64,000 nucleotides of DNA. It comes from Phallusia mammillata (taxonomy: Eukaryota). The DNA lies in the NCBI GenBank assembly GCA_965637545.1, contig OZ281496.1, forward strand, positions 21,762,001 to 21,826,000. The letters run 5' to 3'. Each line of letters starts with the position of its first letter. Position 1 is the stretch's first letter. Of the stretch, positions 25,915 through 63,777 are shown in pieces. Under the pieces are notes generated by a model that did no database searches, was not told the DNA's origin, and saw nothing but the letters and a program-made list of their open reading frames with translations. Position numbers and translations under genes: made by a program.

Positions 25915-26310
25915 AGACTGAGTTGTATTAGGAGCCGAACCCGAAAGTACAAGCCCAAAACCCGGCTCGAACACCATTTGTTTGAAAACAAAAGGTTGGC
26001 AATTGCAAAACATGTCGGACCCAATTTGTTGATAGTTGTAAACGGGCCTAAAATTGGAGTACGAACCCGGCCTCAACCCGAAAGTGCAAGCCCGAAACAC
26101 GCCCGAACCCCAATCGTTTTTAAGAAGCCAGTTTAGACCCGAAAGTTTAATTTGTAGGCGTATACTTCGGAAAGACAAAGCAACAAACACAATAGATAAT
26201 GGCCATGGACGAGGGTTGTTGGGGATTGGTTTATGCCTATTAACTAGCAGCTTAGCTCGTAAACTTATTAAAATAACCTAAGGCCCAACCCGGCTCGACT
26301 TACAACTCTG
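25915..26310. repeat. Dispersed TIR-type repeat (TAGAGTTGTAA..CCCGAA family)
   Basis: Reverse-complement homology to 55230-55610 and a partial copy at about 30438-30607. CCCGAA/TTCGGG multimers; ends GTTGTAA/TTACAAC. Confidence 0.7.
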
Positions 26311-35319: not shown

Positions 35320-35651
35320 AGGGGTTACCAAACAACAGCCCGGAGATCATTTCAGCAGGCTCGCTACCACATTTTTAGGCTCGCTAAACCATGTTGATAA
35401 CTTTGTAACATTCAGAGACTAATCTACTCCTTACGCAAGTTTTCCTGCGAAATGTAGAATTTATATTTCCTGGTTTCATAGGATTACTACGCCCTGGATT
35501 GATCCAAATCCAGTTTGTTACGTCACAGACAAGAAGTGTAATTTGTGGGTAAACAATCGCCTCGCGAACAAGTTAGGGCATGTAACTATGCGGCCCGTGC
35601 GATCAATATTAAACTCATCCGGCCCGCAGTGAAAAAGTTTGCTGACCCTAG
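35320..35651. mobile_element. Degenerate hAT MITE
   Basis: CAGGGGTTACCAAAC ... GGCCCGCAGTGAAAAAGTTTGCTGACCCTAG. TSD decayed; boundaries approximate. Confidence 0.6.
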
Positions 35652-36083
35652 CTCTGGAGTCTAGACTGCTGGTAAAGCAATGTCGTCAATTGCTTGTTGA
35701 CATACGCGTTGCAATAAACATATCAAACAGTCGGCAAGAGCGAAAAGGGTTAGGGTGGCGTAAGTGCCTGCTAAGTCGTAAGTGTTTGCTGCCGTAGGCA
35801 CAAAGTCTAAATTGTGTCACACTGCCAGTCGTATGTTGGTATAAATGAACAGGCTTGTGTTAAACTTGGATTCATTTGCCAAGTGCCTCGATTTGACGAA
35901 CGAAAAAACACGTTTCGGTAAGGCTAAAAATTTCATAATCTGTTTGTACAGAAAATAGATGCACTCAAGGTGTTTTAACAATCATCTTCTTTGTTACATT
36001 TTGTGTTTTTATGGTCAAAAATTTTAACTTAAAGATGTTATTTTATGAAATTTTAGAGGTAAACTTTTTATTTGAGCAACAAA

Positions 36084-39000
36084 ATGAATGTCTTGGATTA
36101 CTTTGTTAGCGGTGTAGCAGTGATCATCGCATGTTGTTTGCTTCTGTTTCAATGGTGGTGGCGTAAACCCCATCCTAAGTTTCCGCCAGGACCCAGGGGA
36201 ATTCCATTGTTTGGGGTACTCCCATTTTTGGGGACTTTTCCGGCTCGTACAATTACACAGTGGGCTCAGGAGAAGTACGGTCCAGTACTGTCGGTGAGGT
36301 TTGGAAGCGAGGACGTTGTAATTTTAACCAATTGGAAAGTTTTGAACCAGGTGCGTTACCGATGGTTAACATCTTTAACATCCGACTCATTAGCTATTGC
36401 TTTTCGGCAAATACTATAAAATATTGCACCTATTTGTTTTTCTAAATTGTCATCATGAACGTTTATTTGGATTCCAATTAATAAATAAGTTACAATTGAG
36501 TTTGTCTTGGAAACAGTACAATCCACAAACTGTAAATACAGAAAAACGAGCCAAATATGGGCGTGTATAATCATCAGAGAAGTATATTTTCATACAAACT
36601 AAATCTTGGTCGAAATTAAATAAAAAAAATAAATAGTGCATTTTCTAATTTGTGTTATGGGTTTTTTAGGCCCTGGTAAAGAACAATGCTCGATTTGCTG
36701 GCAGACCATACGTTCCAATTTTCAACGCGGTTACAGGCAACAAAGGCGTGCTTTTCAGAGATTACAGCGAGGATTGGAAAACTCAGAAGCATTTTGGTTT
36801 AAGGGTTTTGCGAGAGTACGCTCAACATTTTTTGTCTCCAGTGGCAATTTATAAATATTATTTCAGAAATTCAGAAAAAATTTTCATAATCTAACTTATA
36901 AATGATAATTGTGTAATGCAGTGGTTCCCAAACTTTTTCATATTTTTTTCAAAACGGTCCCTTTGCCATCATTTCGAGGGCTCGCGGCCCTTAAGCCTAA
37001 ATGTGTATTTCATAAAAACGAAGTTGATTGCAGGATTTTAGCTAGTTATGCAAAATTGCGCATAACAATCATCCAAAGACAGCATATGACATCACAAACA
37101 GGACAAAAACAGTACGTTTGTGCGCGAACAATTGCATTTTTGATAGTTGCCATTCAATAAAGGCCATTGTTTAGCAAAGGAGACGGTCGATTCTCAATTC
37201 TACCTTTATTTAAACTTACTTACAGGCACAAACTGAAGCCAAATAAGATTATAGAATTACTTCAACCGCTTCGCGGTCCCCTCAAAATTGCCTCACGGAC
37301 CCCTAAAAGACCGCGGACCCCAGTTTGGGAACCGCTGGTGTAATGGGATTTTGCTACAATTTTAGGTGTGTTATGCAAGACAACATAACGTTATTTCTGT
37401 ACTGTAATTTTGACACGTGAACAAACAAAAAGGTTAAGGTAATCAATCACCAACTATAACTTTAAATCACATCGTTGAAGGTGGGGACTGGGCAAACAAC
37501 GTATGGAGAATGTTGTAAACACAGAGGGGGATTACTTTCTAGACTACATTAGAAGCACTGTTGGAAAACCAATGGATTTAAAGGTGGGTTTGTGTCCTGC
37601 CGCTAAAATAACTTTCATTATGTATTATGGCGTGAAAATTACATTCCATTTCGTGCGTCATGCAATTTATAAAAATACATTTATTGACTTTTGCAATACA
37701 TGTACACCAAATACATTTTGAAAATAAGTTTACTAAATTGGTAAATTCATATTCCAGCAGGTGTGCCGACCTAAAAAAAGAGTAACAAATTAAATAAAAA
37801 AAATTGATCTTATAAAACAGAAATATCTTTTCAACGTAACCGGGAACATCATCTCTCAAATCACGTGGGGTACTCGTTACGAATATGATGACGTGATTTA
37901 TAATGGAATATTGGAGGATCTAAAACTTTTGTAAGAAAAAAAATCATTGTTTTTTAAACCTCATTGTTAATTGTGTATGAAATTTTTTTGGGGGTTGCAT
38001 TGCAAAGAGAGCAGATACAATTAAAACGTTGCCTCTTTGATTTTTAAAAACGTTGGGCAGCCTTATCGTATTACGATTAAAATACCTTAAAAAACACACG
38101 CACTAAAGATTTAGAGTAAACAAACAAAAAGTAAAGAATGTATAGTTTGTGTACCAAAATGAACTAAATAAGTTAAATAAAAACAAAATTTAAAAATTAC
38201 ATTTGTTGCAGATTCGGAGACATGGAGTATGGTCGAAAGCTGTTTTGGGTATATTATGCACCAGAACTTAGATATTTACCTGGTTTTAAAAGAGCTTATA
38301 ACCACTTCTTAGAACGACAATACAGTTCTGTAGGTAAGCCCGCACAAGATTGGTTTGATTTGATGTTTAGGTTTCATAAGTTTAATTTTAGGCATGTCCA
38401 AGAAGATTATAGCGTATTGGATCGAAATAAATATGGAACAAGCCTGACAAAACTGGTTTGGTTAGATAATATTAAAGTAAAGACGTCGAAAATGATGATC
38501 AAGGCATTGTAGACGGCAAGAGATTATAGTCTAAGTCCAAATTAATTTGTGAAGGAGAATTGTTTTTTGGTAAACAGTCCAAAAGTGTTCATATAAATAA
38601 ACCCGTGTGCAAAATATGTACCTGGTGGGTGGTATTTTATTCAGCCCTTCCATTAACTTTTTCATTTTGCACCTGGCACAGCTCACCAGACAGTCGCATG
38701 GAGAAGGGCTTTGCGTTTGGTGTCTTTCTGCTTGTTTGCAGATATTAACGATGCTGTAAAAGCAAAATATTTTTTTTAATGTACATTTAAAATTTAAGAA
38801 CGACTAAATGTTTTTTTCTGATCTTACGTCCATTGCTATAGGACTCATTAGTTTTCATTCACCAAGGGTGATTCCAGTTTTAGGTTTCAGTTACTAGTAG
38901 AGTCTGTTTTATGTATACAACTTTTATGATATTGTTTTCCCTAATGACACTTGTGACTTCATTCTACATTTGAAGGTGACATACGTTCAATAAATATGTT

Positions 39001-41419
39001 GACGCTTTCAGAGTTCATGAGAGAGCAAATCGCCGAACACCAGAAGAATTTCAATAGAAACGATATTCGAGATTTTATGGATGCTTTTATCTTTGAACAA
39101 AGACATGGAACGGAAATAAACAAAAAATGGTTTACTGTAAGTTCTTATTTAACTGAAGTAGAAATCAGAAATAATACGGACCCGATGTGCCTTAATGTGG
39201 CCGCGGAATGCTACGGTCAATACCCTGGTGGTCAATGCCATCTCACCTGATGTTCAGTACCTTTTCATCTGACAGTCACCAGATGCCCTAATGAAAGCTT
39301 AGGTCGACAAACTGTACACTTTCTGCTACTACTTACCCATTTTAACGACATATTCTGTTCCAACCAAAAAACTACCAAAATACCTTTTTGATTAATTCCC
39401 ATTTGCACCAAATGCTTTTATTTTTTTATTTAAAATGTAAAGATACCTAAAATTTAATATAAGTAATGATACCTTGGTGCAAAAGCTGTAGCGACATTTC
39501 AATCATTTGAACTTATTTATGTAAAAAGTGGACATTTTAAAAACACAATCCAGATCGCAATGTAGCTGTTAAATACTTTGCCCTAGTTTGTAATTCGAAA
39601 AATATAAAATGTGAATTAGTAACATAGTTTTAATGTAATTGTACTTAACGTGACTGTCGTGTTTTTTGTCAAGCCGAATGTGATGTGACATACAACCGAG
39701 CTAATTTTATCTAATTTAGAGCATGATCGCTATCAATTAACAGCAGAATTTAAATAGGCTGCCGTTGCCGTTTGGTTAACTAAACCCACCTATTAGGCTA
39801 GAGCAGGGGTCGGCAACTTTTTTTGTACGGACCATTTTTGAAACTAAAATTTTATCCCGGGCCGGTCTTTAAAATACTACAAATATTCAGCAATGAAAAC
39901 GTCTAAATTAGTTTATTATTCCCGGGATTCATGAGCAAAGTGTATAAAGCATTTAACCTGGAAAATTATACGGCCTGGTAACAACCTTCTCGCGGACCGG
40001 TACCGGGCCGCGGACAAGCGGTTGCCGACCTGCACTGGGCTAGAGAATTGCCTAACCATTCGCAAAACAATATGTCATATTTCCATAAAAAGAAAACTTG
40101 TTCTTATAGGATGAACAGCTTGTAATGTACGCGAAAGATTTGTTTCTGGCTGGAACGGAGACCTCCAGCACCACTCTGGGGTGGGCGTTTCTTTACCTTT
40201 TGCATTATCCGGAGTGTTGGGAACCTATTGAAAAGGAAATTGAAAAGGCCTTTGGTCAGTTTATCAAGAGCTGAGCTTATTTTACAAACTAGCATCAAAA
40301 AACAATTATAACATTCTAAGTGTTGCAAGTTTTACAGAGTTTGGTGTAAGTATACGCTGCAGTGGACATTTAGGGAGTATCGTAGTATAAAAGTATAATT
40401 GACCTCATTAACCGTTTTTTTCTTCAAGGTATTAACGGCGTCCCTACATTGTCCAGACGAGACGAAACGCCATATATCATGGCCTACATACAAGAAACCA
40501 TGCGAGTTAGAACCCTGGTAACTTTAACCGCTCAACATAAAACAACTGACGACGGATATTTAAATGAACATTTTATTCCGAAAAACACGACTGTAAGTGC
40601 AAGAGATTTTTTCCCTTCACCCAAATGTTAGGGGTTGTAGTTTGAAAGAATAAAATGACGGTTTTGCTTTTTCTGTGCCGTTACGTTCATTCTTGGGTTA
40701 AATAAACCTGCAGCCATGGCAAGCGTTTAAGACGGGGTTCGAACCCAGTACTCTGTGAACAAATAACCCCATCAAACCATTCAGCCACGTTTACATAATT
40801 TTTGTTAAAATGTAGCGCAGTTTAGTGGTAAAGTTTCTATCGTGGTATTTAAAATTCTGCTCCAATTTTTCTGCCCTATGATTTGGACTTTTGTGAGATT
40901 TTTTTACTCTTTCACTAATTGCAAAAAAAGATTGAGATGGTAAAACTGGAAGTACAGAACGTAACCTACAACAAAAAACCTATCACTATCTGTTCCAATA
41001 TAAACTTTTTTTCATAATTTTTTCTTATTGCACTTCGTTTCTTTGAAACTAAATACGTTTAAGTATATGCTACCAATTTTCTACAAAGTCATGGCGTTCA
41101 CTTGCAGGTAATTCCATGTTTGTGGGGCGTTCACATGGACCCGGAAATATGGCCAAATCCAGAAAAGTTTGACCCATACAGACATATCGACAACAATGGA
41201 AAGTTTGTTGCATCTGACAAGATTGTCCCATTCTCGATGGGACAAAGATTTTGCCCCGGAGAAGGAGTGGCCAAAGTGGAGATCTACATATTCTTTGTAA
41301 AGATCTTGCAGAAATTCAAGTTTCGGGCTCCGAATAAAAGCATTCCGTCTCTGGATGGCCTACTTACCACTATCCATGTGCCTAGTGAGCTAAATGTAAT
41401 TTTTGAGGAGCGTCACTAA
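36084..41419 (+). CDS. Cytochrome P450, CYP2 clan (copy B, intact)
   Basis: Exons 36084-36350, 36670-36815, 37481-37583, 37821-37930, 38212-38333, 39012-39136, 40110-40254, 40429-40592, 41108-41419. Motifs PPGPRG, WKTQK, LAGTETSSTT, ETMR, FSMGQRFCPG. Confidence 0.94.
36919..37337. mobile_element. hAT MITE in CYP B intron 2
   Basis: TIR CAGTGGTTCCCAAACT / AGTTTGGGAACCGCTG. Perfect TSD GTGTAATG. Confidence 0.9.
39804..40037. mobile_element. hAT MITE in CYP B intron 6
   Basis: CAGGGGTCGGCAAC / GTTGCCGACCTGCACTG. Perfect TSD GGCTAGAG. Confidence 0.88.
40720..40790 (-). mobile_element. tRNA-derived SINE head
   Basis: Minus-strand A box TGGCTGAATGG (40787-40777) and B box GGGTTCGAACCCC (40746-40734). 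No acceptor stem. Confidence 0.6.
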
Positions 41420-41859
41420 CATTTAAGTTAATTACACAATATTAAGAAGCCGGTTGTGTCTTACTGCACATTAAAGCATTTGGACTACGCAACCATTATA
41501 CTGTTTGTCATTTAATTGTTTGTTCCAATTTTAGTTTTCTGTAAAACTTGTAAAATCGAATTTTGAATACACATTACAATTAAAAAACCTGAAAGTGTTT
41601 ATAGTGTTATTGTATATAGAAGGTAGTTTCTCTTGATTTTTAATGTAAGTTTTGGCAAATTGCAACCTTGAAATCCCAAAGCGACCCTTTTGAACTTGAA
41701 TAAACTAAGGTAGTGACATCTAAATTTTACACCGGCCAGTCACACGTGTTCCTAAAGTTATTTGCAGTAAATCTAACTTTTACTAGGAGAATTTTTTTTC
41801 GATTACCACTAAGTTGTGCTAAAGAGTCGATGAAGAGTTAAAAATTAGGCAAATATGAA

Positions 41860-41960
41860 ACTTGGCCGAATGGCCTGGCGCGCCTGACCCATATACAGAC
41901 ATAAAAAGCTTGATCGGCATTCGTCCCCGGGAGTGTCCTGGGTTCGAATCCCGTGAAAAA
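41860..41960 (+). mobile_element. tRNA-derived SINE head
   Basis: A box TGGCCGAATGG at 41863 and B box GGTTCGAATCCC at 41941. Same family as 23011-23230. Confidence 0.75.
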
Positions 41961-43084
41961 AATATCCTGTGTTAATTGGGCAATTAAGTCTGTCGCAATC
42001 CAATTCCGTTTCATCTGTCGCGTTATAAAATTCGTTTAGATTAGATTAAATAGTCGCCAAGACTGCCAAAGGATAAGCATAACCGTCTGTGTTCACAGAG
42101 TTGGGGTTAATTGCAGTCTCGTCTACTGTACTTGTGTTTCCTGAGTAAGTGAATTAAGCGACATTGCTTCAACCTTAGAGGAACCTGATAGGTTAAACTA
42201 TATTCATATCTGCAACTCTCTTGGACGTAACAATTAAATAAATATGACCCAACCGGCAATGCACATGTATACTAAGTTATCCATCTTGCAACATAATTCC
42301 AATTCCAATGAGCGTAACAGGTTGTGAAAGATTTTAATTAAGTAAGGCCCTAATTATTTCCAATAGGCGATACAGATACTCCTTTTCCCAAGAACTGCCT
42401 GGTTCTTCCTTTACCAAGAACTGATTAAATCATCCATCGGCTTTGATCCTTAAAGGCAAGCATTAAACGTCTTTATCGAGAGCACAGCTGTAAATAGTTT
42501 TTAACTGGTGTCCAACTCTAGTTTTGCGTTTAGTAAAAGTACACTTCTAAGATCAACTAGATTCACTTCAGCAACATTAAGTCTTACACTTAATAAGACG
42601 TTAGTTTGCGTAATACCCACTCTCCGCCTCTTCAGCACAACTTAGTGTTAATTAATAAGCCGATGTTTTGAAAAAAATTCTCTACGAATAGACTTAGGTT
42701 TACTACATAAAACTTTAGGAACGCTTTTGACTGATTATTGTGCAATTTCGCTCCTGTAGATTAATCATGTTTACCCGAGTGGTTTCGACTGGTGCATTGG
42801 TTTGAGGATTCATGGTAAAGGTTGCAAGATATTGAGTTGCAAAAAATAATCTGCAAATTGCAGTGAAATACCTGTTAAACACTCCCTTTACGTTATTTAC
42901 ATATTTACAATTTTTATTGAATCAAATTTTGATTTAACAAGTTTTACAACAACAAGCCAAACTTGGCACACACAAGCGTTAGATGGTTGGTTACACAGTT
43001 TAAATGCATGGATGTAGCCTACAACATGTAACATTTCAACTTTTTTTTGTCACAACCGACATCATAACGTTATGAAATGAAATG

Positions 43085-46000
43085 TTAGTGACGCTCCTCA
43101 AAAATTACATTTAGCTCACTAGGTACGTGAATAGTTGTGAGTAGGCCTTCTAGTGAGGGAATCCTATTATTTGAAGCCCGAAACTCAAATTTCTGCAAGA
43201 TCTTTACAAAGAATATATAGATCTCCACTTTGGCCACTCCTTCTCCGGGGCAAAATCTTTGTCCCATCGAAAATGGAACAATCTTGTCAGATGCAACAAA
43301 CTTGCCATTGCTGTCGATATGTCTGTATGGGTCAAACTGTTCGGGGTTTGACCATATCTCCGGGTCCATGTGAACAGCCCACAGACAAGGAATTACCTGC
43401 AAGTAAACGCAACAATTTTTAATACTCCTGAATTTAGCGAATCACGATAGCTGACAAATTTAAAAACATTTTCATTTGAAGAAAACTATATGCAACCTTT
43501 GTGCGAGAATATACATAGGAATACAGGGAAAAATTTCGTTTTGTACCATTTTAATCTGCCTGAGTAAAATACTCTCCAGAAAACGCCAAAACAGATGTAA
43601 AATGTGCTTTATGTAAATTAAATAAACATACACAAATTGTAACGACCGAAAACTATAAGTGTAAAACAGTTAAGACACACTTATAGTTATAATGATGAAA
43701 ACTTTACCACTAATCTGCGCTAGAGAGTAAAGTCAAAGAAAATAATTCAAGTAGCCAAATGATCTGCGTCGCCCGGCAGGTTAAAAATTTAAACTTATAG
43801 GCATTAAAAGACGGGAGCGTTTTGGGATTTGATTCAAAGACTAAACCAAACCAAGTATTATCAAATCATGTATGAAACTCTTTTGCAAATAAAAAAATTT
43901 TTTTTTTGTCATAAAAGCATATTTTGTTTTTTACTGTTTTACTAGGTTGTGTGCACAGTAAATGGCAAAACAATCATTAACATTCAAGGGGAGTAAATAA
44001 AACTGTTTTACTTACAGTTGTGTTTTTCGGAATAAAATGTTCATTCAAATATCCATCTTCCGTTGTTTTATGTTGAGCAGTTAAAGTAACTAGGGTTCTG
44101 ACACGCATGATTTCTTGTATGTAGGCCATGATGTACGGCGTTTCGTCACGTCTGGACAATGAAGGAATGCCGTTAATACCTTGAAGGAAAAAGTAGCGTA
44201 CATGTTTAAACACGCAATATGTTATACAGCGTGGTTGCAATAATGCCTTTTGATTTTTACAACTTTCATGGACACACAAAAATTGATATTTTAGTGCTAA
44301 TAGTGGGGAAAAACTTGCATCAAAGGGCTATAATTTGCATCCAACATATACCTTTTAACATTTTAACTACAGCATTTACACTAATCGCGCGTCCTTTTGC
44401 AATTGTCGACATGCAACATCTCCACGAAAAGATTGTTTTTCAACCCTTCAATGGTAAGTCTAAAGCCAGCACATTTGCACATGCACTCCACTCACCATAT
44501 GCTTTCTCAATTTCTCTCTCAATACGATTACAACACTCTGGATAATGCAGAAGGTAAAGAAACGCCCACGCCAGGGTGGTACTGGAGGTTTCAGTTCCAG
44601 CCAGTAACAAATCCTTTCCATACATTACAAGTTGCTCATCCTGTAACAAGTTTCTCTTTTAAGCATATATGAAGAAATATAACGTTAGGTTGCGATTGCT
44701 ACGAAATTCTCTAGCTTTATTACTTGGCTTGTTTAACCGTGCCGAAACCGGGTAACCGTTTTTAATTAAGATGTATATGGATAAAATACTTATGATCGAC
44801 TATTGTCATCATAATTTTTTTCAAAAACTGAATATGAAAACATTTCAAGATTTAAAAAAAATAGTAATAACTTATGTAAAAGAAAAATATGTCAGTCTTT
44901 TTTTTCAAGATCAGTTAAATAAGTACTTACAGTAAACCATTTTTTGTTCATTTCCGTTCCATGTCTTTGTTCGAAGATGAAGGCGTCCATAAAATCTCGA
45001 ATATCGTTTCTGTTGAAATTCTTCTGGTGTTCGGCAACTCTTTTTTCCATGAATTCTAAAATAAAATCATAAAACGTAAAAAAACAGCTACTAATACAAA
45101 AAGATTAATGTGAAAGGAAAAATTTGAGAAAAAAAGCTCAGACCTTGTTCTTAGTGCAAAAAGAAAGAAATAAAAGTGATACAGCAAATACCAACCAGCA
45201 TGTGCAAATTATGCACACGTTTTCGCTGTTGTTAATTGATGCATGCACGTTTGGGCTTGGTGACCACAATCTAAAGTAATTCTCCTTCACGATTTTATTC
45301 GGTCCCAGGCTATTATCTCCTTCAGTATACATGCCTTAATGCTCAGTTTAAACTTATATATAACTAAACATTAAACAAAATTATTTTTGTCAGACTTGTT
45401 CCCTGTGTAATTCGACACAATACATGCCTCAACTTAAACTTCTAAAACTCAAACATCAAATCAAACCAGTCTTGTGGGGACTTACCTACAGAACTGTATT
45501 GTCGTTCTAAGAAGTGGTTATAAGCTCTTTCAAAACCAGGTAAATATCTAAGTTCTGGTGCGTAATATAACCAGAACAGCTTTCGACCATATTCCATGTC
45601 TCCAAATCTGCAACAAATATAGTTTTTTTAGGTGTCGTTTTCTTTAATGTTTATATTTGTTTCATCCGAAATTCACAAACTGGAGATAGTTAAGTGTTTT
45701 GTATTAGTAAGTTAACACGAAAGTTTGAAATTTCCTTCAGCAAACTGTCTCTGCCATTTTAACAAGGCAAAACATATCACAGCTCGTTACTTTAGCAAAC
45801 TTATACAAACAATGATTTCTTCTTACAAAAGTTTGAGATCCTCCAATATTCCATTGTAAATCACGTCATTGTATTCGTAACGAGCACCCCAGGTAATTTG
45901 AGAGATGACATTGCCGGTTACGTTAAAGAGATATTTCTAGGTAGAACAAAAGTACAAAAAGAAAGATAAATAACATAGGCAATGTCTTCTTAAAAAATAC

Positions 46001-47120
46001 ATCAGTTTACTGTTTTTGTCACATATGCGTTGACACACACACATACGCACGCACGCGCACACACCTTTAAGTCTATTTGTTTTCCAATATTGCTTCTAAT
46101 GCATTCTTGGAAGTAATCCCCCTCGCTGTTTACAATATCCTCTATACGCTTCTTGCCCAAACCCCACCTGAAACAAAATTATAAGTTAGATAGTGAATTA
46201 ACAATTTAAACAACTTTCTCCCTGCTGTAGCGGTTTAACCACTACACAAAGGGCTATTATCTGCTTTAGACTTTAAAACGTTGTGCTTACTCTCGCAAAA
46301 CCTTTAAACCAAAATGCTTCTGAGATTTCCAATCCTCGCTGTAATCTCTGAAAATCACGCCTTTGTTGCCTGAAACTGCGTTGAAAATCGTAACGTAAGG
46401 CCTGCCGGAAAATCGTGCACTGTTCTTTACCAGGGCCTGAAAATAACAAAACATAAAAAAATCACAATGCAGTTTATTTAACCAGAGAAATATAGAAGTC
46501 AAAACGTTGATAAGCAAATCAAAATTGCCAGAGGAGCTAAATTTGGTTTACACTTACGTGGTGCGAACCAAAACCTGTGCAGTTATATCCAGTAAAATTG
46601 ATCCATTAAACTAGCTTTGACAAATACCTTTATTTTTAATTGTGAATATGCTTTTTGTAGTTTGATAAAAAATAACGAAAATTCTGCAGGATTTATAACA
46701 TCAATAGTAAAAAACTTTTAAAAGTTGTCACTGGTGCAAGGGGCCCCCTTAACCGGCCACAAACACAATGATGTAGGTCTTATAGGACGGATGTCATCGT
46801 TAATACATGCGTCGGCCGTTGTTATAAGGCTGGGCATTTAGAAATTGACGCACCTGGTTCAAAACTTCCCAGTTGGTCAAAACTACAACGTCCTCGCTTC
46901 CTAACCTCACCGACATCACAGGACCGTATTTCTCCTGGGCCAACTGATTAATTGTTCGGGCTGGGAAAGTCCCCATAAATGGGAGTACCCCAAACAATGG
47001 AATCCCCCTGGGTCCTGGTGGAAACTTGGGATGAGGTTTACGCCACCATCGTTGAAACAGCAGCAAACAACATGCGATGATCACTGCCACACCGCTAACA
47101 GGGTGATCAAGGACATTCAT
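43085..47120 (-). CDS. Cytochrome P450, CYP2 clan (copy C, intact; inverted paralog of B)
   Basis: Exons 47120-46854, 46436-46291, 46167-46065, 45936-45827, 45607-45486, 45055-44931, 44640-44496, 44179-44016, 43396-43085. Exon lengths identical to copy B. Motifs LAGTETSSTT, EIMR, FSMGQRFCPG. Confidence 0.94.
46033..46064. repeat. Alternating purine-pyrimidine (CA/CACG) microsatellite
   Basis: ACACACACACATACGCACGCACGCGCACACAC at the start of CYP C intron 3. Confidence 0.85.
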
Positions 47121-47961
47121 TTTGTTGCTCCAGGAGAAAGTTTATCACCCAAAGCTCAAACAATACTATACATATGTCGAACTTGTTTACTATAACACAG
47201 AGAAGCGCCTGTACCAAACAAAAATGATTATTTATAATGCCCACATTCCTTCAAAAACACATTATGAAAGCTACAATAAAGACCTTTGCCAGCCTTAAAC
47301 AGCTTTTTACGTTGAATGATGTGAGACACATGTCACAGTAATTTCAACAAGTCTTGACGGCTTCTTGTCGTCTATCTCTAAGGCAAGCTATTGCGGTGGT
47401 AATATCTTGCATCGGCATCTTGTAAAATGCAGCTTTATCCCAACATAATATTGACGCTGTGACTTATTTCGAATTTCTTTTACTTGTTTTGCAAGACTAT
47501 TGCCTGGGGCAGCAAATACACAAGGTATGTAGAAGACTTGCGGCATAGCAGCAACTTGCGCAAACAACCACATTATTACGCTTTTGCCAACTGTTTTGCA
47601 TTGGCCTAACCACTAAAGATATAGACACCGTTTTAATGACAACTTTTAGGATGTAAGTCTTACGCGGAATAGGTCTTACACGGAAAAATGAAAACAAACT
47701 ATTTAGGCAACAATACGTAATTGCTCCAAGTTAGACCGCAATACCGCAGTGACGTAAATCATTGGTTCGGGTTTGCTTGGTTGGTAACGCGTTATTAGTC
47801 GTTCTTGCAGCACTTGCTGTTTGGCCTAAACTCTGGGTTGAGAAGGATAGGTTGTGTAAGAAATTTGCAATGAGTGTGATAGGTTGATAACATACATACC
47901 ACCACTTCAAAACATTGAGAGAAATAAGCTGAAAACTGATGCTTTTAAACAACCAAATGTA

Positions 47962-52168: not shown

Positions 52169-52907
52169 CAGGGGTGGGGAACCTTTTTGTTTGTGAAGGC
52201 CGCCAAACGGTTTATCGACACTCGTTCAGGCCACACAGACTATTTCTCAGGCCAAGGACAGTGACATTCAAACTTTTTGACTTACAGAATGGTTGATGTG
52301 GGGTCACGTCTAAAACTGCGGGCCCGCTTGGCCCAGCACTTGGCCCAGCACTTGGCCCGTTTTTCCCAGCGAGAGACGGGCTAAGCAAATGGATATAGTG
52401 GGCCCGCAGTTTTTCAATTGCATGAAGTGCTGGGCCAAGCGGGCCAAGTGATCCAAGTGGGCCCGCAGTTTTATACGTGATCGGTTGATGTGCTACTGGA
52501 CTTACGGTCCAAGCTAAATAAAATTCGTCACTACATTTCTACCCTCTCCACAACATTCAGGATTTTATTAACATATAAACTCGCTTGTTTATTAATATCA
52601 ATCTAAGAGCATCTTGTGACATCACAGACGAGTTTAAGACATTCGATTGTGCGCAAACAATTGTTCGTTTGCAGCAGAAGTAAGATTGTAGAAACTTGGT
52701 CTCTTGGCAGTTCTACGGATATCGCTTTGTGTACCAGTACGCAAACATTTGGCTCTAAACCGCTGCGCTTAAACCAATCAAATCGTAATGTGGAATAAAG
52801 GTAAAAAAATACGTTTCTGTCTAGTTTTTAGCGCATGGTGCAGTGTGTATTATCAACATCGTTAATTGTATTCTGACATCGTTTAGGCCGCAGGTTCCCC
52901 ACCCCTG
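52169..52907. mobile_element. hAT MITE hosting a nested TIR element
   Basis: Perfect TIR CAGGGGTGGGGAACC / GGTTCCCCACCCCTG. Perfect TSD GTCTAAAA. Confidence 0.92.
52301..52482. mobile_element. Mutator-like MITE nested in the hAT MITE
   Basis: About 30-bp TIR (G)GGTCACGTCTAAAACTGCGGGCCCGCTTGG / CCAAGTGGGCCCGCAGTTTTATACGTGATC. Flanking duplication GGTTGATGTG. Internal CTTGGCCCAGCA repeats. Confidence 0.8.
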
Positions 52908-53396
52908 GTCTAAAACTTGGCAAAAACACACACTATATGTCCTCTTTACTTATAAGAAAATGGTTTACTGAAGCGGCCAAAGCTTTATTGTGCAACGAAG
53001 CCATGTCAGAAGTATGTTAGAAACGTGAAAAAGATAGAGCAACGCAAATCAGGCGTTTATAAACAGGCAACGCGGTAAACGAAAACGGCAAATGGCACGC
53101 CGCGATGCGCATGAGTGGCGCCTTTACGCACGTTCAAGTCCTATGTTTTACCAGTCGATTGTAAATTTTACCGTCGTAAAAACTATATTTCTTTGTTAAG
53201 TGGGAATTCAAGTGGATTTTTTCGTATAGATTTGATGCAAAGATTTCTAAAAGCTTGTGCCATGTCAGATGGTTTTCAATTGTTTTCTTTCATTTTTATT
53301 AGTACCCACGTTTCTTTGAATGAATTATTCATTTTTGTTAATGTACAATCAAAACTTGGAACATAAATGGTGAAACAAGCGCTTAAAATGTAAGCC

Positions 53397-56300
53397 TTAA
53401 ATGATTAAACAAAACATAAGACAGACGCCCCAAATGACTTGAAATGCATGGTGAACGCGCAGTCCACTTATTGCGCCACAGGTATAACTCCCAACGTAGT
53501 TAATGCATTTATCATTTGGACATGGATCAGGCGTTTGTTCGCATTCATTGACATCTGGAAAATATGTGGTGAAATATTACTCAGTTATTCTAAATTGGAT
53601 AACACATACGCTGTAAAAGTTTGAAAATAAAACTAAAATGTAAAATCTCGACTTACCATCCGGTGCAGTGAAGTTTAAACCTGTAACTGCAAAAACAACG
53701 AGCTACGGTTATTTACGTTGCAGATTAATTAGTATTATTGATTGATTGATTTATGACCCATGAAATAAATCAGTTCCAAACGATGTGACAAATATTAACA
53801 TTTGGTATATTCTACTTCGTTTACCCGTTTCAATCCAAGAGTACACTTGTGTCATTTGTGTGTAAAATGTTGGCCCATTATCACATCTGTCGTCACTAAA
53901 ACTGTTCACACCATATTGGTACCATGTCCCGTCGCCAACATCGCACATCAGTGGTCCGCCCCAATCTCCCTGAAATAATATTGTTATTTTGTTATCAGTT
54001 TTAGTATGGGAAAACTATAAATTCACGCATCGTCCCAAACAATGGTTTTAACATGCTTAGTTTTCCCTTTAGTTGGAATTTACGGACCAAATATGACTGT
54101 GACCCATTTTACCCATTGCGGAATAAAAGAGTGAAAGCCTGGAAACATTAAACATAAAAGTAGTTATTACCGCACAAGTATCTTTGTTGTCTGCATGGGC
54201 ACACAGAAGGGTGCTGGGGAGCCCATCAGGCGACGCACCGCGAAATCTTCTGTAGTTTGGATCACAGTATGTCCTGGTTTGTATCTGCATTTCTACTTCT
54301 TGTAACGTCTCAGAAGGACGAAATGTATGGTCTAAAGCAGTGTGGTCCAACTTTATTTTGTTGCGGGCCATTTAAAATCGTTAACTTACTACGCGGGCCA
54401 AGGTTTAAATTTTTGCAGGAAAAAACTTTTTCTGGGCCAACTCTAGGGTAACTATACACCTTTTTTACCTACAGATAAGTTTATTTTTATACTTTGTAGT
54501 TATTTACTTAGCAGAAGCTGTCAAAAATATTCAGTTTCCACTCTAGCGCAGAAATGCCCCTGAACGGTTTGGAGAAGCAGAACCCTTTATTACATAACAA
54601 TGCCGTGTCATGCGTCACAATAGGAGATTTTATAGCATTTAGTGTGCGTTAATCCTGATATATTGAAAACATTGAATTACTGAAGACAAAACTTATAGTT
54701 GTCATTAAAATGTTGGGACTTTCGCGGGCCAACAAAATTATCTCGCGGGCCACAATTGGCCCGCGGGCCTGCAGTTGGACCACGCTGGTCTAAAGGAAAA
54801 TCAGGATTTTTTTTGCAAACTGCAATACTTCATACCTTAAAAAGATCCACTCAGTTTATTGTTTGGTCATAGTTAGGCCTGCCCAAGTCAAAACGGTAGG
54901 TTAGCGACAGGAAAATTCTTTGGCGCGGGACGGATGCTATTGTTGCTATAACATTTATATTAAGTAATCGTGAAATAGAAGATATCGTGGACAACGGCAA
55001 AAATAACTAATCAATCAAAATTTCGTGTATAAATATTGAAATTAAAGTCTGTAAAATGAAGTTGAGTGAAAAATGCAGATCCGTGAAATGACAATACTTC
55101 TTTGTCACACATCCACAATGGATCACGCCAGACACTCACCTATTTTGTACAAAACTATACAATAAACCTTCGACTGATTTCGCTAATAATAACAGCAATA
55201 AAAAGTGTCATTTCGAACACAAGACGTCCTAAAGTTGTAAGTCGGACCGGGCTTTGCGGGCCGGTTTCGGTTTCGGTTTCGGGCTTGGGTTTCTTAAAAA
55301 ATGCGGGCTTGATTCGGGCCTAACTTTACACTTGGTGTCAACATTTTTTAAATATCTTTAACTAGCTCAGTAGCCAGTTGATGGGCCTGACCTAATTTTG
55401 AACAGCCCTTAAACGCCTTGTTTAAGACCAATTGTCTGTTGTGTTGGTTGTCTTAGTTTTTCTGAGGCTTTAATTTAAACGCCTGTCAATCAAACTTTCG
55501 GACCTAAAAGGGCTTCCACAAAACCATGCGGGATCGGGCCGGGTTTCGGGCTTGTACTTTCGGGTTCGGGCTGTGTTCTGGCTCCAGTTTCAGGCCCGTT
55601 TACAACTCTACGATTTAAAATCGTTCCGCGGGAAGCATTATCTTATTCAGGCCTGCTTAAATAAAACCATCAATGATCGAAGACCAAAGTTCATGAAAAC
55701 CTATAAGTTTTATACACATATCATATCTTAAAATCCTAAGGACGAATGACCCTATTGTTGTTCACGACTAACTTATAAATGTATTATCGTAAGGTGTAAA
55801 CAAACAAATCAAAAATTTACTCCTAAAATCATACCATGTGTTCTTCCCCAACCCGCAAAGAAACATTTTGTGTTTGGAGGCAATTCGTAATTCGTTCCAG
55901 GTGGTAAACAGATGGGTCTCACATCATCATTAAACACAATTCTTGACGACACTTCTAAAAGCGCTGCGTCGTTTCCTGACTGATAATTTCTGAAAAAGTA
56001 AGTATCTTAATATTTTCACTACACAAACTATATGTGTCCATGTTTGAATATTTACGTACATAAAACTTGGGTGTTTGACCTTTCTTCTCACTGGTAACCT
56101 TTGTTCTCCTGGCGCATTTTCAGAAAGCGTCAGTGTTCCAGCGTAGATCACCAACCTAAGTTAAGGTCCATATTACTTTGTTTGTTTTGTTGTGTTGTCT
56201 TATGTTTACTCACGTTTCAGAGTCACTGAAACAGTCGGCTCCCGTCATGACCCATTTTGCAGACAAAATACTTCCTCCACATAAAAATTCATGGAATAGG

Positions 56301-56903
56301 ACATTGTTTTTAAACACTTGCACCATCCAGGGCCAAGAGCCGCTTGTTGAAGTTGACCCGCCGTGTATTCTTGCGCTCTGGAACATTCAAAAACGTAAAA
56401 GTTTAAAAATGTCTGACAAGTATAGTGAGTATGCAAAAGGTTTACCGTTCTGAACGAGCTGGACCGTTTACCACAGACTGGTGCTGGAGTCTCTGCAAAC
56501 CCAACGCGTTGGTTTGTTGATTATGTGACATACACTCTTGCAAATTTGTGTACATATTAATTGTCTATGTGTAAAAGTAAATATACCTGTGCATGTTGGA
56601 ATTGGACTGTCCCAACTGGCATCGGTTTCGTTTGCTACGCATGTTGCAGTTGGTATTCCATTAAGAGTGTAACCGCTTTTGCAGGAAAAATCTACTACTT
56701 CTGCATTGTTATATACGGCGGAGTCTGGAACCACATTGCCATTCAAAATATCTGGTCTGGAACAAGTAGGAACTGCAAGACAAAATTTACATATTTTAGT
56801 TTTCTAATAGTTAACGTACCAACAGCAATGGCAACGTACCAACAGGTGTTGTTAACACCAGTACCACATTGAGAATGAGAAAGTAACTTTTAGCGTACTT
56901 CAT
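53397..56903 (-). CDS. Secreted or GPI-anchored serine-protease homolog: signal peptide - CCP/Sushi - inactive trypsin domain - truncated cbEGF - hydrophobic tail
   Basis: Exons 56903-56840, 56772-56587, 56492-56446, 56377-56214, 56155-56060, 55989-55835, 54331-54171, 53969-53825, 53687-53657 and 53554-53397 join in phase. Motifs CGKR, RIHGG, SWPWMV, CGGSILSAKWVMTGADC, NDAALL, PICLP, GWG, DTCAGDWGGPLMC, DVNEC..CINYVGSYTC. Confidence 0.88.
54338..54787. mobile_element. hAT MITE inserted on the 3' splice site of protease exon 7
   Basis: TIR CAGTGTGGTCCAACT / AGTTGGACCACGCTG. Perfect TSD GTCTAAAG (minus strand CTTTAG|AC) at 54330 and 54788. Confidence 0.92.
55230..55610. repeat. Dispersed TIR-type repeat (TAGAGTTGTAA family)
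   Basis: TAAAGTTGTAAGTCGG ... GGCCCGTTTACAACTCTA. Homologous to 26033-26310. No TSD seen. Confidence 0.75.
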
Positions 56904-57458
56904 CTTTCTAAATCGACAAGATTGTATATGTTTTTGAAAAATCTTTTTTTAAATATCACTTATAGCCTATTCATTTATAAAATGTCTAAACTTTCTGTAT
57001 TTAAGAGAATGCAAACCTGCATGTTGACAACAACGATTACTTTTACCTCTTGGAAATATCTTATTACAAAGACTGATGGTTCTTTACGTTCAGAACGATA
57101 TAAGGTGTGGTAACTTATATGTCAATAATATATTCCTAAATTTGTGTCTTATTTTCTATGTGTTGCGTTTTGCGATTCTTGCCCTATCGCTGTGCAAATT
57201 CAGAATTGTTGCTTGTATTTCATGTAGTTTACTAAGTTTTGCGATTTTTGTTTTCTTTCTCGGTCCTGCTGTTGGGTACAACTTGTTTCTTCATAGCTAT
57301 AGTGTCTCGGACGAGCTTTAAATTGTAATGCAGCTACTTAAAACAATACATACAAATACCCGTTTTAGTCCTATTTAAAAAGAGCTACAGAACTTTAGTG
57401 AAGGTTCTGATCACACTTTTATTAAATCGTAATAAAATCAGTTGCCTGTACCCTAGCA

Positions 57459-58040
57459 CAGTGATTTCCTAACTTCTAAAGACGCTTCAGTTTCTTTTAA
57501 AAATTAGTTTTGTGGTTTCTCGCGACCAATAAATATGCATGCAGAAACTCAGTTAAAGGATAATTAAAACTTCCAGACTTTTGCTTAATAAACAAAAGAA
57601 GCTGGTCCTGTGGTTGCGCGGTAAACAACTTGCTTACAATTCTGCTACAACTCTAGTTCTGTTCGCAAACCTATTTTGGCCTGTAACCAAACACCACCTA
57701 CCAACAAAGACAAAAACGGTCTTCACCCGAACCTAAAGCTCGGACAAGTTTTTGTTTAGACGCGTAAAACCAACCAACCGACAAGCGCGCACATACCTGC
57801 AATCAGACGTGTCTAGCGTGCTATCAGACGTGACAGAAGCAACGATTGGACAACGGAACTATGCTGGTACTTTTCTTTTCATTAATACAATGTCTTCGAG
57901 TCGACCGTGAGACGTATTGGATAAAGCATGCACAAAATTAGTACACCTTGTATAAGCAAATGCTTGAACATGGCATTAGGGGGAGAACGCAAGTTGTGCA
58001 CAACTAAAATAACAGTAAACCTACCTTTCGCTATTCTATA
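57459..58040. repeat. Second copy of the hAT-derived repeat at 47962-49030
   Basis: Shared strings GACCAATAAATATGCATGCAGAAACT, AAAACCAACCAACCGA and CAATCAGACGTG.CTAGCGTGCTAT.AGACGTGACAGAAGCAA. Confidence 0.75.
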
Positions 58041-61600: not shown

Positions 61601-63777
61601 GATGGATTGAAGGGGTTGCGTTGCTATCCTAAACAAACACATAGCATTAATAATAGAAAATATTTTGCACAAAAGCTATTTCAGACTTAATAAAAAGTAT
61701 CAGTGTATAATCTAACATTAATGGAGCATATATTGCACAAAAGTGATTTTACACCCAATAAAAATTATGTGTGTATAATTTACTGCTATACTTAACCTAA
61801 TAAACATTACCTTCAGTTTAAACATCCAAAATGCATCAGTCTTTACTATGTTCCGACTTGTAAAAATGTTTTTTTCATTCAAAACTGACATAAAACTTGC
61901 AACGTCGACAATACTGAAGTCAAAGTAACCGCTTAGCAACCTGGACGTGACGTATCGACAACCCGCAGATTTCCGCTGCTGTGATTGGCTGAAAAAGCCC
62001 TGTGGTTCGAATTCGGAAACATTTTGGAAATATGCCAACCGTATATGGCAATGTTAATCTTGTCTAATCAAAGCTTTTAGGTCATCTTACAAAACAGCAT
62101 CCAGAACACCAAAACAAGTCAAATAAATTCTTCCAGTTACAATTGGCTGCCCAGAACAAGCAGAGCAGTTTGTTTGGTAAGCAAATGGGACACCAGGTAA
62201 TCGATGACAAAAACCTCATATTAGCCTCGTTAAAAATGTCACATCACATAATGAAAGTCAAACGTCCGTATATTGAACTTGAACGTGTAGTTCAGCCTTG
62301 TTTGGAAATTGCGGCTGATTATATTCATGGAGGAAAAAGGGCAATTGATAAAGTCAAACAACTTCCAATTTCCGACACTACTGTTGGGCGACGCTGTGTC
62401 GTTATAGCCAAAGATTTAAAAGAGCAACTAATCCAGAAGCTACTAAAAGCCTCCTCTTTCGGCATACAGTTGGATGAAAGTACTGATGTAAGTAGTGAGT
62501 CTCAGCTAATGGTTTTCTGTAGGTTTCCTGATGTAGAAGTAAACAGAATAGTCGAACACTATCTTTTTTGTCAACCAGTTGGAGAAACAGCAACTGCTGA
62601 AGCGATTTTCAACAAAATAAACAAATTCTTTGAAAACGAGAAGTTAGATTGGTCAAAGTGTAAGGCTGTGACAACAGATGGCGCTGCAGCTATGCGAGGT
62701 TCACAAAAGGGCGTGATTAAAAGAATACAACGTCTGTCTCCAAAGTGCGTAGGAATTCATTGCATTCTTCATCGCGAAGCATTAGTAACAAAGAAAATGA
62801 AACTGAATGCAGGCATGATAGATGTCTGTGAACATGAATTAAACGATGTTCTGCGGGCAGTTGTAGACATTGTAAACGCAATTCGAAAAAGTGCTAAGCA
62901 ACACAGATTGTTTTCAAAACTTTGTGATGAAATGACATCCTCTTCCAAAAAACTGATTATGCACTCGGAGGTACGGTGGCTATCCAGGGGGAAAGTTCTT
63001 TCCCGTGTGTTCGAACTTCGTAAACCATTAACAGAGTATTACACTCAACATAAAGACGAAAGAGCTATAAAGTTCCTTGACATATTCTGGGTTGCAAAAT
63101 TGGCGTACTTGGCATCGATTTTTGATCGTTTCAACCAAGTCAACATCTCTCTTCAAGGTAAAGGGGGTGATATATTTCGCTCTACGAGCAAGATCAATGC
63201 ACTGAAACTAAAAATTCCACTCTGGAAAAATAATGCTCAATCAAGAAACTTCAATGACTTCCCTTTATTAAGCCAATATATGAAAGAGTGTGGTTGGGAG
63301 TTTGAGGATGTTTCTATTGAAGATAAACTGGCTGTCCTTATTGTTGGTCTCTTGAACTTACTTGGCGATAATTTGGCCGCGTACTTTCCTGACGACAACG
63401 ACCAATATCTGGAAACCAACTCGTGGATTATTCAGCCATTTAATGATGAGCTTACAGTGGACGAGGAATTGCTGGAACTCCGCGCTGATTTAAACCAAAA
63501 GTACTTATTTCGAGGAGTGGATTACTCAGAATTCTGGGTATCTCTTTTACAATATCCTGAATACGAAAATATTGCAAAAAAGGCCATTGATATTTTGGTA
63601 CAGATGCCTACCACTTATTTATGCGAAGAAGGATTTTCCAGTCTTGTCGAGATAAAGTCAAACAAACGAAACTCGATACTTGACATTGATTCTTTAATGA
63701 GGGGGGCTATTGAGAACGTGTTAACACCACGTTATGTCCAAATTGCAGAAACAATGCAGCAGCAAGCTAGCCATTGA
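58682..63777 (+). pseudogene. hAT transposase (BED finger + DDE), interrupted in the BED finger by a Mutator-like element and a TAA at 62065
   Basis: 58682-58883 encodes M..KRRKWNDDFINYGF..CLFCSTV. The frame resumes after the insertion as YGNVNLV*SKLLGHLTKQHPEH. From 62068 it is open to 63777 with QLDESTD, TTDGAAAM, HCILHREAL, EVRWLSRGK and TTYLCEEGFS. Confidence 0.9.
58884..62035 (+). mobile_element. Mutator-like (MULE) element, 3152 bp, with decayed transposase
   Basis: 56-bp TIR (1 mismatch) GCATATTTCCAAAATGTTTCCGAATTCGAACCACAGGGCTTTTT.AGCCAATCACA. Perfect 9-bp TSD CAACCGTAT. Internal fragments such as EMVFVASTTNLDRTNASLTVLLCGSPIG resemble the animal MULE DDE core (from memory, not searched). 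Confidence 0.9.

What the first reader, a model, noticed from the sequence alone, without database searches (positions are those of the whole stretch)
53397..56903. Dead trypsin-fold protein with a haptoglobin-like CCP-SP core plus C-terminal EGF and membrane anchor
Seen: catalytic His is replaced by Asp (TGADC for TAAHC) and catalytic Ser by Trp (GDWGGP for GDSGGP). The Asp (NDAALL), activation site R|IHGG, interchain Cys pair (CGKR/PICLP), S1 Asp (KDTC) and all reading frames are retained. Established: CCP plus inactive SP is the haptoglobin design, derived from MASP/C1r-type proteases. Inference: this is a maintained pseudoenzyme acting as a surface-tethered receptor, decoy or cofactor in complement-like immunity or gamete recognition. 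I do not recall this domain order being described.
Basis: partly seen in the sequence, partly recalled or inferred. Interest (0 to 1): 0.72.

Follow-up and report, generated by a model that had tools for sequence, protein, structure and literature searches.

The report
Membrane-tethered dead trypsin-like protein, sea squirt
A compact sea-squirt gene encodes a surface-tethered trypsin-like protein that has lost two of its three catalytic residues but keeps its fold, so it probably binds rather than cuts; dead proteases are a known kind, I found no description of this domain order, and its partner and role are unknown.

Summary
A 10-exon minus-strand gene (56903-53397; all introns GT-AG; 401 codons) encodes a signal peptide, one CCP/sushi module, a trypsin-fold domain, the first two-thirds of a calcium-binding EGF module, and a hydrophobic C-terminal tail. 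Alignments put Asp at His57 and Trp at Ser195. Asp102, Asp189, Gly193, Asp194, the R|IHGG cleavage site and every canonical disulfide cysteine are kept.

- It is a folded pseudoprotease, probably GPI-anchored.
- Descent from the haptoglobin/C1r lineage is not supported. The His-loop disulfide is present, the protease domain is split over five exons, the Trp codon TGG is one step from TCG, and the best solved matches are factor XI, kallikrein, acrosin, TMPRSS2 and prostasin.
- The EGF lacks Cys5 and Cys6.

A spliced contig in one probable RNA run joins exons 6-10 exactly as modelled, without indels, but it differs at about 7% of bases. It therefore comes from an allele or a close paralog. In the window's own copy, a hAT-type MITE duplicates the intron-6 acceptor.

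No ortholog was recovered. This scan had already noted, about 60 kb away on other DNA, a tandem array of GPI-anchored CCP + dead-protease genes. This gene is probably an outlying member of that family; I could not test that.

The parts
56840..56903 (-). Exon 1: start codon and signal peptide (MKYAK + hydrophobic core); donor G|GTACGT, phase 1
   Evidence: 10-residue hydropathy up to 3.2
56587..56772 (-). Exon 2: one complete CCP/sushi module (4 Cys, one NET sequon), phase 1-1 exon
   Evidence: Sushi, E 1.5e-11, profile 1-56/56; closest solved modules are CR1, CR2, factor H, DAF
56446..56492 (-). Exon 3: linker carrying the Cys (CGKR) expected to pair with Cys122
   Evidence: pairing inferred from the S1A two-chain pattern
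56214..56377 (-). Exon 4: activation site SAR|IHGG, WPW, Cys42...Cys58, and TGADC with Asp (GAC) in place of His57
56060..56155 (-). Exon 5: protease-domain strands between His57 and Asp102
   Evidence: no Pfam hit on its own
55835..55989 (-). Exon 6: NDAALL (Asp102 kept), PICLP (Cys122), Cys136, GWG
   Evidence: covered by the spliced contig in run X1
54338..54787 (.). hAT-type MITE in intron 6. Its 8-bp target duplication GTCTAAAG (54330-54337 and 54788-54795) copies the exon-7 acceptor CTTTAG|AC.
   Evidence: terminal inverted repeats, direct repeat 458 nt apart; contigs of other copies break off at exactly 54338 and 54787
54171..54331 (-). Exon 7: Cys168, Cys182, KDTCA (Asp189, Cys191); the exon that differs most from the transcribed copy
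53825..53969 (-). Exon 8: GDWGGP with Trp (TGG) in place of Ser195; Cys201, Cys220; Ser216 and Thr226 in place of Gly
53657..53686 (-). Exon 9: 10-codon linker with an NFT sequon, phase 1-1
53397..53554 (-). Exon 10: calcium-binding EGF truncated after Cys4, a small-residue stretch (GAIS), a spacer, a 16-residue hydrophobic tail, and stop TAA
   Evidence: the X1 contig runs uninterrupted to 53427
53295..53300 (-). AATAAA polyadenylation signal, 97 nt after the stop

Best explanation
This is a real ascidian gene for a secreted, surface-tethered pseudoprotease.

Shown:
- The gene has 10 exons and 401 codons. It encodes a signal peptide, one CCP, a trypsin-fold domain, a truncated cbEGF and a hydrophobic C-terminus.
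- The nucleophile Ser195 is Trp and the general base His57 is Asp, so it cannot cut peptide bonds by the serine-protease mechanism.
- All five S1A disulfides, the R|IHGG cleavage site, Asp194 and Gly193 are kept.

Inferred mechanism:
- The precursor enters the secretory pathway and its C-terminal tail is exchanged for a GPI anchor near GAIS.
- A trypsin-like convertase cuts at R|I. The new Ile16 N-terminus pairs with Asp194 and locks the domain in the 'activated' shape.
- The CCP stays attached through the linker Cys-Cys122 bond.
- The former substrate cleft, now filled by Trp195 and narrowed by Ser216/Thr226, and its surrounding loops then serve as a non-catalytic binding surface displayed on the cell. 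Haptoglobin, HGF and sperm PRSS37 use dead trypsin folds in this way.

It is most likely a solitary, one-module member of a lineage-specific family of CCP + dead-S1A surface proteins. The ligand and the tissue are unknown.
For: - Gene model with consistent phases and an intact frame.
- Domain hits exon by exon.
- Residue-level alignments for positions 57, 102, 122 and 195.
- All 20 Cys are accounted for by canonical pairs.
- A spliced contig in run X1 joins exons 6-7-8-9-10 at exactly the modelled junctions. It has no indel over about 600 nt and reads into the hydrophobic tail.
- AATAAA lies 97 nt after the stop.
- Exon GC is 44.5% against 36% in introns.
- The tail's hydropathy rises to 2.5 at the very C-terminus, after the small residues GAIS.
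- Known parallels: GPI-anchored testisin and the pseudoprotease PRSS37 on sperm (PMC9114714), and ascidian ovochymase with one dead protease domain (PMC9265791).
- Neighbouring family: notes. These are a lead only.
Against: - The transcribed contig differs from the window at about 7% of bases (44 of 604), so this exact copy has not been shown to be expressed.
- Runs X2-X4 show only repeats. Exons 1-5 have no RNA support.
- A MITE duplicates the intron-6 acceptor. The upstream copy keeps the native pyrimidine tract, so this haplotype may mis-splice.
- No ortholog was found, so long-term purifying selection is not shown.
- The GPI anchor, the activation cleavage and any binding partner are inferred only.
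Confidence: 0.6

Rival explanations
1. A recently disabled or decaying copy. The frame is still open, but the gene is drifting: the catalytic residues and the EGF second half are lost, a transposon sits on a splice acceptor, and only a paralog is expressed.
For: - The MITE's target duplication copies the acceptor, 458 nt upstream, next to the original pyrimidine tract.
- No contig of 99% identity or more lies on any exon.
- All three differences from the transcribed copy in exon 9 change the amino acid, as do two or three of the four at the start of exon 7.
- EGF Cys5 and Cys6 are lost.
Against: - There is no stop or frameshift in 1206 nt, and all nine introns keep GT-AG.
- All 18 structural cysteines and the conserved motifs WPW, CGGS, PICLP, GWG and GGP are intact.
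- There is no indel against the transcribed copy over about 600 nt.
- The acceptor next to exon 7 is intact.
Confidence: 0.2
2. One reading: a haptoglobin-like derivative of a MASP/C1r-type complement protease, acting in complement-like immunity.
For: - A CCP lies directly before a two-chain dead protease domain, with the interchain Cys pair, as in haptoglobin.
- The CCP is closest to modules of complement regulators.
- Ascidians have MASPs and many CCP genes (PMC5465252).
Against: - The His-loop Cys42-Cys58 is present, the protease domain is split over five exons, and the TGG codon is one step from TCG. From my own knowledge, the C1r/C1s/MASP-2/haptoglobin lineage lacks the loop, has a single protease exon and uses AGY.
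- There are no CUB exons upstream.
- No MASP, C1r, C1s or haptoglobin chain is among the best 60 solved matches.
- Descent from an ascidian MASP-1-type gene is not excluded.
Confidence: 0.1
3. A secreted or type-I membrane form. The C-terminal hydrophobic stretch would be a short transmembrane helix, or simply the degenerate remainder of the EGF module, and no GPI anchor is added.
For: - The tail contains two Cys, a Gly and a Trp.
- The sequence CGAISG still follows the EGF pattern C-x-C-x-x-G.
- No GPI predictor was available.
Against: - The 16 hydrophobic residues end exactly at the C-terminus, with no cytoplasmic residues.
- They are preceded by small residues and a 6-residue spacer. This is the usual GPI-signal layout (my own knowledge).
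Confidence: 0.1

Closest known systems
Haptoglobin (vertebrate CCP + dead S1A domain)
   Same: - A CCP lies directly before a trypsin-fold domain that lacks His57 and Ser195.
- It is a two-chain form held by a Cys pair after cleavage at an R|I site.
- It acts by binding, not by cutting.
   Different: - Different lineage markers here: His-loop disulfide present, five protease exons, a TCN-derived codon.
- Different replacements: Asp and Trp here; in haptoglobin Lys and Ala, from my memory.
- This protein has a C-terminal EGF remnant and a membrane tether, whereas haptoglobin is a soluble plasma protein.
- Not among the best solved matches.
Prostasin (PRSS8) and testisin (PRSS21): GPI-anchored S1A proteases
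   Same: - A trypsin-fold domain with a prodomain Cys-Cys122 link and a C-terminal hydrophobic GPI-type signal.
- Prostasin is among the solved matches of exons 4 and 8.
- Testisin is a GPI-anchored sperm protease (PMC9114714).
   Different: Those enzymes are active and have no CCP or EGF module.
Non-catalytic serine protease homologs: PRSS37, HGF/MSP, protein Z, azurocidin, insect clip-SPHs
   Same: - The catalytic residues are lost while the fold and disulfides are kept.
- Several need the activation cleavage to work as ligands or cofactors.
- The MSP (HGF-like protein) beta chain is the best solved match of exon 6.
   Different: The accessory modules differ (kringle, Gla-EGF, clip). None combines an N-terminal CCP with a C-terminal EGF and a lipid anchor.
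Tandem array of GPI-anchored CCP + dead-S1A 'poly-pseudoprotease' genes in the same genome (scan note s1-368970)
   Same: By that note, the same building blocks (sushi repeats, dead trypsin-like domains, GPI signal) lie about 60 kb from this gene. The 93%-identical transcribed contig may come from there.
   Different: Those genes are said to carry two or three protease domains, and this one has a single domain plus an EGF remnant. I could not read that DNA, so kinship is untested.
MASP / C1r / C1s
   Same: A CCP-protease junction with an Arg-Ile activation site. Ascidian MASPs are, from my memory, of the split-exon, TCN type.
   Different: No CUB-EGF-CUB region, one CCP instead of two, a dead catalytic site and a C-terminal tether.

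Membership tests
S1A (chymotrypsin-fold) peptidase family, as a fold | Collinear match to the Trypsin profile, with the conserved disulfides 42-58, 136-201, 168-182 and 191-220 | tested here: met
   Pfam Trypsin hits on exons 4, 6, 8 (and weakly 7), at profile positions 1-46, 82-130, 135-176 and 178-220. All eight Cys are present.
S1A peptidase, as an active enzyme | Catalytic triad His57-Asp102-Ser195 | tested here: not met
   Asp at 57 and Trp at 195; only Asp102 is kept.
Serine protease homolog / pseudoprotease | Fold and structural residues kept, catalytic residues replaced, reading frame intact | tested here: met
Serine protease homolog / pseudoprotease | Maintained by selection (conserved orthologs, dN/dS below 1) | tested here: inconclusive
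   No ortholog was recovered. The only comparison is a 7%-different transcribed copy without indels.
Haptoglobin / C1r / C1s / MASP-2 lineage | Protease domain in one exon, no His-loop disulfide, AGY-type codon at position 195 (features recalled from my own knowledge) | tested here: not met
   Five protease exons, Cys42 and Cys58 present, and TGG is one step from TCG.
Haptoglobin / C1r / C1s / MASP-2 lineage | Closest sequence relatives are MASP, C1r, C1s or haptoglobin | tested here: not met
   None is among the best 60 solved chains for exons 2, 4, 6 or 8. The top matches are factor XI, kallikrein, acrosin, TMPRSS2, prostasin, plasminogen/MSP and tryptase. No tree was made.
MASP/C1r/C1s architecture | CUB-EGF-CUB-CCP-CCP before the protease domain | tested here: not met
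   Exon 1 is a signal peptide directly followed by one CCP. No further module exons lie upstream in the window.
GPI-anchored S1A proteins (prostasin/testisin type) | C-terminal GPI attachment signal | tested here: inconclusive
   Small residues GAIS, a 6-residue spacer and a 16-residue hydrophobic end. No dedicated predictor or experiment was available.
Calcium-binding EGF module | Six Cys with the D-x-N-E-C ... C-x-N-x-x-G-x-Y-x-C-x-C pattern | tested here: not met
   Only Cys1-4 and the calcium and hydroxylation motifs are present. The profile is covered at positions 2-29 of 43, and Cys5 is Ala.
Local CCP + dead-S1A GPI-anchored gene family (scan note s1-368970) | Sequence kinship with the array genes | not testable with these tools
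   The array lies outside the window. The look-up by sequence was blank.

The most novel reading that the evidence does not exclude
The gene is one unit of a fast-diversifying, ascidian-specific set of lipid-anchored dead-protease receptors. The loops around the former active site (exon 7) would vary between copies or individuals and serve self/non-self or sperm-egg recognition, that is, a recognition system built on a trypsin scaffold.

Hints only:
- Differences from the transcribed copy are unevenly spread (exon 7 about 14%, exon 8 about 3%; chi-square p = 0.004).
- Where I could read them, they mostly change the amino acid.
- A related tandem array is reported nearby.
Probability: 0.12. Interest if true: 0.8.

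Novelty: new variant of a known kind. Interest (0 to 1): 0.4.

Why it matters
Dead proteases reused as binding proteins are known (haptoglobin, HGF, PRSS37), and so are lipid-anchored trypsin-like enzymes (prostasin, testisin). I found no description of this combination: CCP, a dead but still activatable trypsin fold, an EGF remnant and a GPI-type tail.

It shows the haptoglobin-like design arising a second time, from a different protease lineage, in the sister group of vertebrates. If it belongs to the neighbouring array, it marks a lineage-specific family of surface proteins whose variable loops could be tested for a role in ascidian immunity or fertilization.

As a single gene with no known partner, and with uncertain expression of this copy, its interest is moderate.

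Tried and rejected
1. Exhaustive HMMER search with exon 4. The ranking by summed score filled the list with multi-protease proteins. None is more than 52% identical, none carries GDWGG, and the 20 I looked up are cnidarian, arthropod, mollusc, amphioxus or vertebrate proteins.

2. Word search with the open frame around exon 8. It was blank, which says little because only proteins of 48-152 aa were eligible.

3. Two profile searches in which exon pieces, each by reference and each as its own row, were aligned with protease domains of database proteins so that full-length proteins became eligible (A2; A6). Both were swamped by relatives of the carrier rows, and there was no tunicate among the 120 listed each time. 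The best per-exon identity to any fetched protein is 55%.

4. Exact look-up of the exon-7 open frame in public assemblies. It is not on record.

5. Alignments A1, A3, A4 and A5 misplaced fragments and were not used.

6. A search for paralogs or the missing EGF half inside the window found none.

7. Four literature searches for the architecture found no description.

8. Considered and rejected: catalysis by another residue (there is no nucleophile at 195 and no base at 57), and further 5' module exons (exon 1 is a signal peptide).
Full report
**What is there.** The minus strand between 56903 and 53397 carries ten open pieces that join through GT-AG introns with consistent phases. Together they form a 1206-nt reading frame of 401 codons ending in TAA. 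Eight introns are 58 to 201 nt long. Intron 6 is 1503 nt and is mostly made of inserted repeats. Exons are 44.5% G+C against 36% for the introns, and an AATAAA lies 97 nt after the stop. Nothing else in the 64-kb window resembles any of these exons. The neighbours are three cytochrome P450 genes, an RGS gene, a DEAD-box helicase gene and a transposase frame. Earlier notes of this scan call the genome a sea squirt, and one names Phallusia mammillata. I did not verify the species.

**Domains, exon by exon.**
- Exon 1 is a signal peptide.
- Exon 2 is a complete sushi/CCP module (E 1.5e-11). It is closest to modules of CR1, CR2, factor H and DAF.
- Exons 4 to 8 match the Trypsin profile in order, at positions 1-46, 82-130, 135-176 and 178-220.
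- Exon 10 matches the calcium-binding EGF profile (1e-7), but only at positions 2-29 of 43.

**The catalytic site.** Alignment with factor XI and plasma kallikrein puts TGADC over TAAHC, so His57 is Asp. Alignment with tryptase and chymotrypsin-like chains puts GDWGGP over GDSGGP, so Ser195 is Trp. Alignment with plasminogen puts NDAALL over KDIALL and PICLP over PACLP, so Asp102 and Cys122 are kept. A clean alignment of exons 4, 6 and 8 with three protease domains shows the same (A2). The codons are GAC and TGG, each one substitution away from CAC and TCG. Without a nucleophile and without a general base, this cannot be a serine protease.

**What is kept.** All 20 Cys have a canonical role: four in the CCP, the linker Cys with Cys122, the pairs 42-58, 136-201, 168-182 and 191-220, four in the EGF, and two inside the hydrophobic tail. 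The cleavage site SAR|IHGG, Gly193 and Asp194 are present, so the zymogen-type switch could still operate. Asp189 is present, but Gly216 is Ser and Gly226 is Thr. Together with Trp195, this probably fills or narrows the S1 pocket. That last step is inference.

**The C-terminus.**
- The EGF has D-V-N-E-C, three more Cys and the C-I-N-Y-V-G-S-Y-T-C motif. It then reads C-G-A-I-S-G where relatives read C-Q-C-L-P-G.
- Cys5 is therefore lost, and no Cys6 follows at the usual distance.
- The last 16 residues are hydrophobic (15-residue hydropathy up to 2.5) and run to the very end. They are preceded by the small residues GAIS and a short spacer.
- This is the usual layout of a GPI attachment signal. 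I had no predictor and no experiment, so it remains an inference.
- No missing EGF half lies downstream.
- The RNA contig reads straight through into the tail, so the end of the model is not an artefact of a missed donor.

**Expression.**
- No run on record as RNA holds the stretch.
- Four probable RNA runs were laid on 52400-57600. One of them, X1, has a 606-nt contig that covers 55973-55835, 54319-54170, 53968-53825 and 53555-53427.
- The letters between these pieces are diverged versions of the first 12 bases of exon 7 and of the 30-nt exon 9.
- Introns 6 to 9 are therefore removed exactly at the modelled junctions. That shows an RNA origin, or less likely a retrocopy.
- The contig has no indel, but it differs at 44 of 604 positions (7.3%). 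It is therefore another allele or, more likely, a close paralog.
- The differences are unevenly spread: exon 7 has 22 of 162 and exon 8 has 4 of 144 (chi-square p = 0.004).
- In the two short pieces I could read, most differences change the amino acid. All three in exon 9 do so (G to D, L to S, A to V), while the NFT sequon is kept.
- Runs X2-X4 cover only the repeats. Exons 1-5 have no RNA support.

**A caveat for this copy.** A 450-nt element with inverted ends (CAGTGTGGTCCAACT) lies at 54338-54787 and is flanked by the 8-bp duplication GTCTAAAG. Contigs of other copies break off at exactly those two coordinates. On the coding strand the duplication reads CTTTAG|AC, which is the acceptor of exon 7. 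The copy next to the exon is intact. An identical acceptor, however, now stands 458 nt upstream behind the original pyrimidine tract. If that one is used, the message gains 458 nt and loses the frame. Whether this haplotype splices correctly is open.

**Relatives.**
- An exhaustive search of 1.84 billion representatives with exon 4 gave nothing above 52% identity.
- The word-index searches gave either nothing or lists filled by relatives of the carrier rows.
- The best per-exon identity to any of the 395 proteins fetched is 55%. All are ordinary proteases of non-tunicates.
- Absence of relatives cannot be claimed.

**Comparison with the known.**
- The design resembles haptoglobin: a CCP, a dead two-chain trypsin fold, and function by binding.
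- Three lineage markers speak against descent from the C1r/C1s/MASP-2/haptoglobin branch: the His-loop disulfide is present, the protease domain has five exons, and the Trp codon is TCN-derived. The defining features of that branch are from my own knowledge.
- The best solved matches are factor XI, kallikrein, acrosin, TMPRSS2, hepsin, prostasin, plasminogen/MSP and tryptase.
- His lies near an exon end, Asp in mid exon and Ser at an exon start, with phases 2, 1 and 0. From my memory, this is the common trypsin/kallikrein gene pattern.
- Descent from a split-exon ascidian MASP is not excluded.
- Functional parallels exist. Testisin is a GPI-anchored sperm protease, and PRSS37 is a dead trypsin-like protein needed for sperm function (PMC9114714). 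Ascidian ovochymase carries a dead third protease domain, and ascidian sperm proteases also act by binding egg-coat proteins (PMC9265791). Ascidians hold many CCP genes, including the polymorphic vCRL1 (PMC5465252; PMC9265791).
- No paper found describes this domain order.

**Earlier scan notes.** A note with a follow-up (s1-368970) reports, 60 kb beyond this window's end, a tandem cluster of nine genes for GPI-anchored proteins. These are built from sushi repeats and two or three dead trypsin-like domains. Another note reports a dead trypsin + EGF-like + LRR gene elsewhere (s1-410967). These are unchecked leads. They make it likely that the present gene is an outlying single-module member of a lineage-specific family, and that the X1 contig may come from that array. 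I could not test either point.

**Verdict.** The reading as a folded, tethered pseudoprotease is well supported. Descent from the haptoglobin lineage is not. Maintenance by selection, expression of this exact copy, and any immune or gamete role are open.

Noticed in passing
window 54330-54795: A hAT-type MITE of 450 nt with 15-nt inverted ends. Its 8-bp target duplication GTCTAAAG recreates the exon-7 acceptor and leaves a second identical acceptor 458 nt upstream. Other copies of the element are transcribed in all four runs laid.
   Followed up: partly
window 55230-55610 (intron 6); similar translated text at 25906-26277 and 52215-52538: A second G+C-rich multi-copy repeat (GGGCC/GGTTTCGG motifs), covered at high depth by contigs of runs X2-X4 that break off at its edges. 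Together with the MITE it accounts for most of the 1.5-kb intron.
   Followed up: no
window 30100-47150: Three cytochrome P450 genes: two on the + strand (about 30.1-34.3 kb and 36.1-41.4 kb) and one on the - strand (about 47.1-43.1 kb). The last exons of the second and third are nearly identical, pointing to a recent inverted duplication. Pfam p450 hits of 1e-27 to 1e-28.
   Followed up: partly
window 62068-63774 (+): An uninterrupted 569-codon frame with a weak DUF4371 match (E 1e-4, below Pfam's cut-off). It looks like a hAT/ZBED-type transposase or a domesticated copy.
   Followed up: partly
window 53825-54331 against the run X1 contig: The transcribed near-copy differs about five times more in exon 7 (loops around the former active site) than in exon 8. 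This is either diversification of the binding loops or a patchwork from gene conversion.
   Followed up: partly
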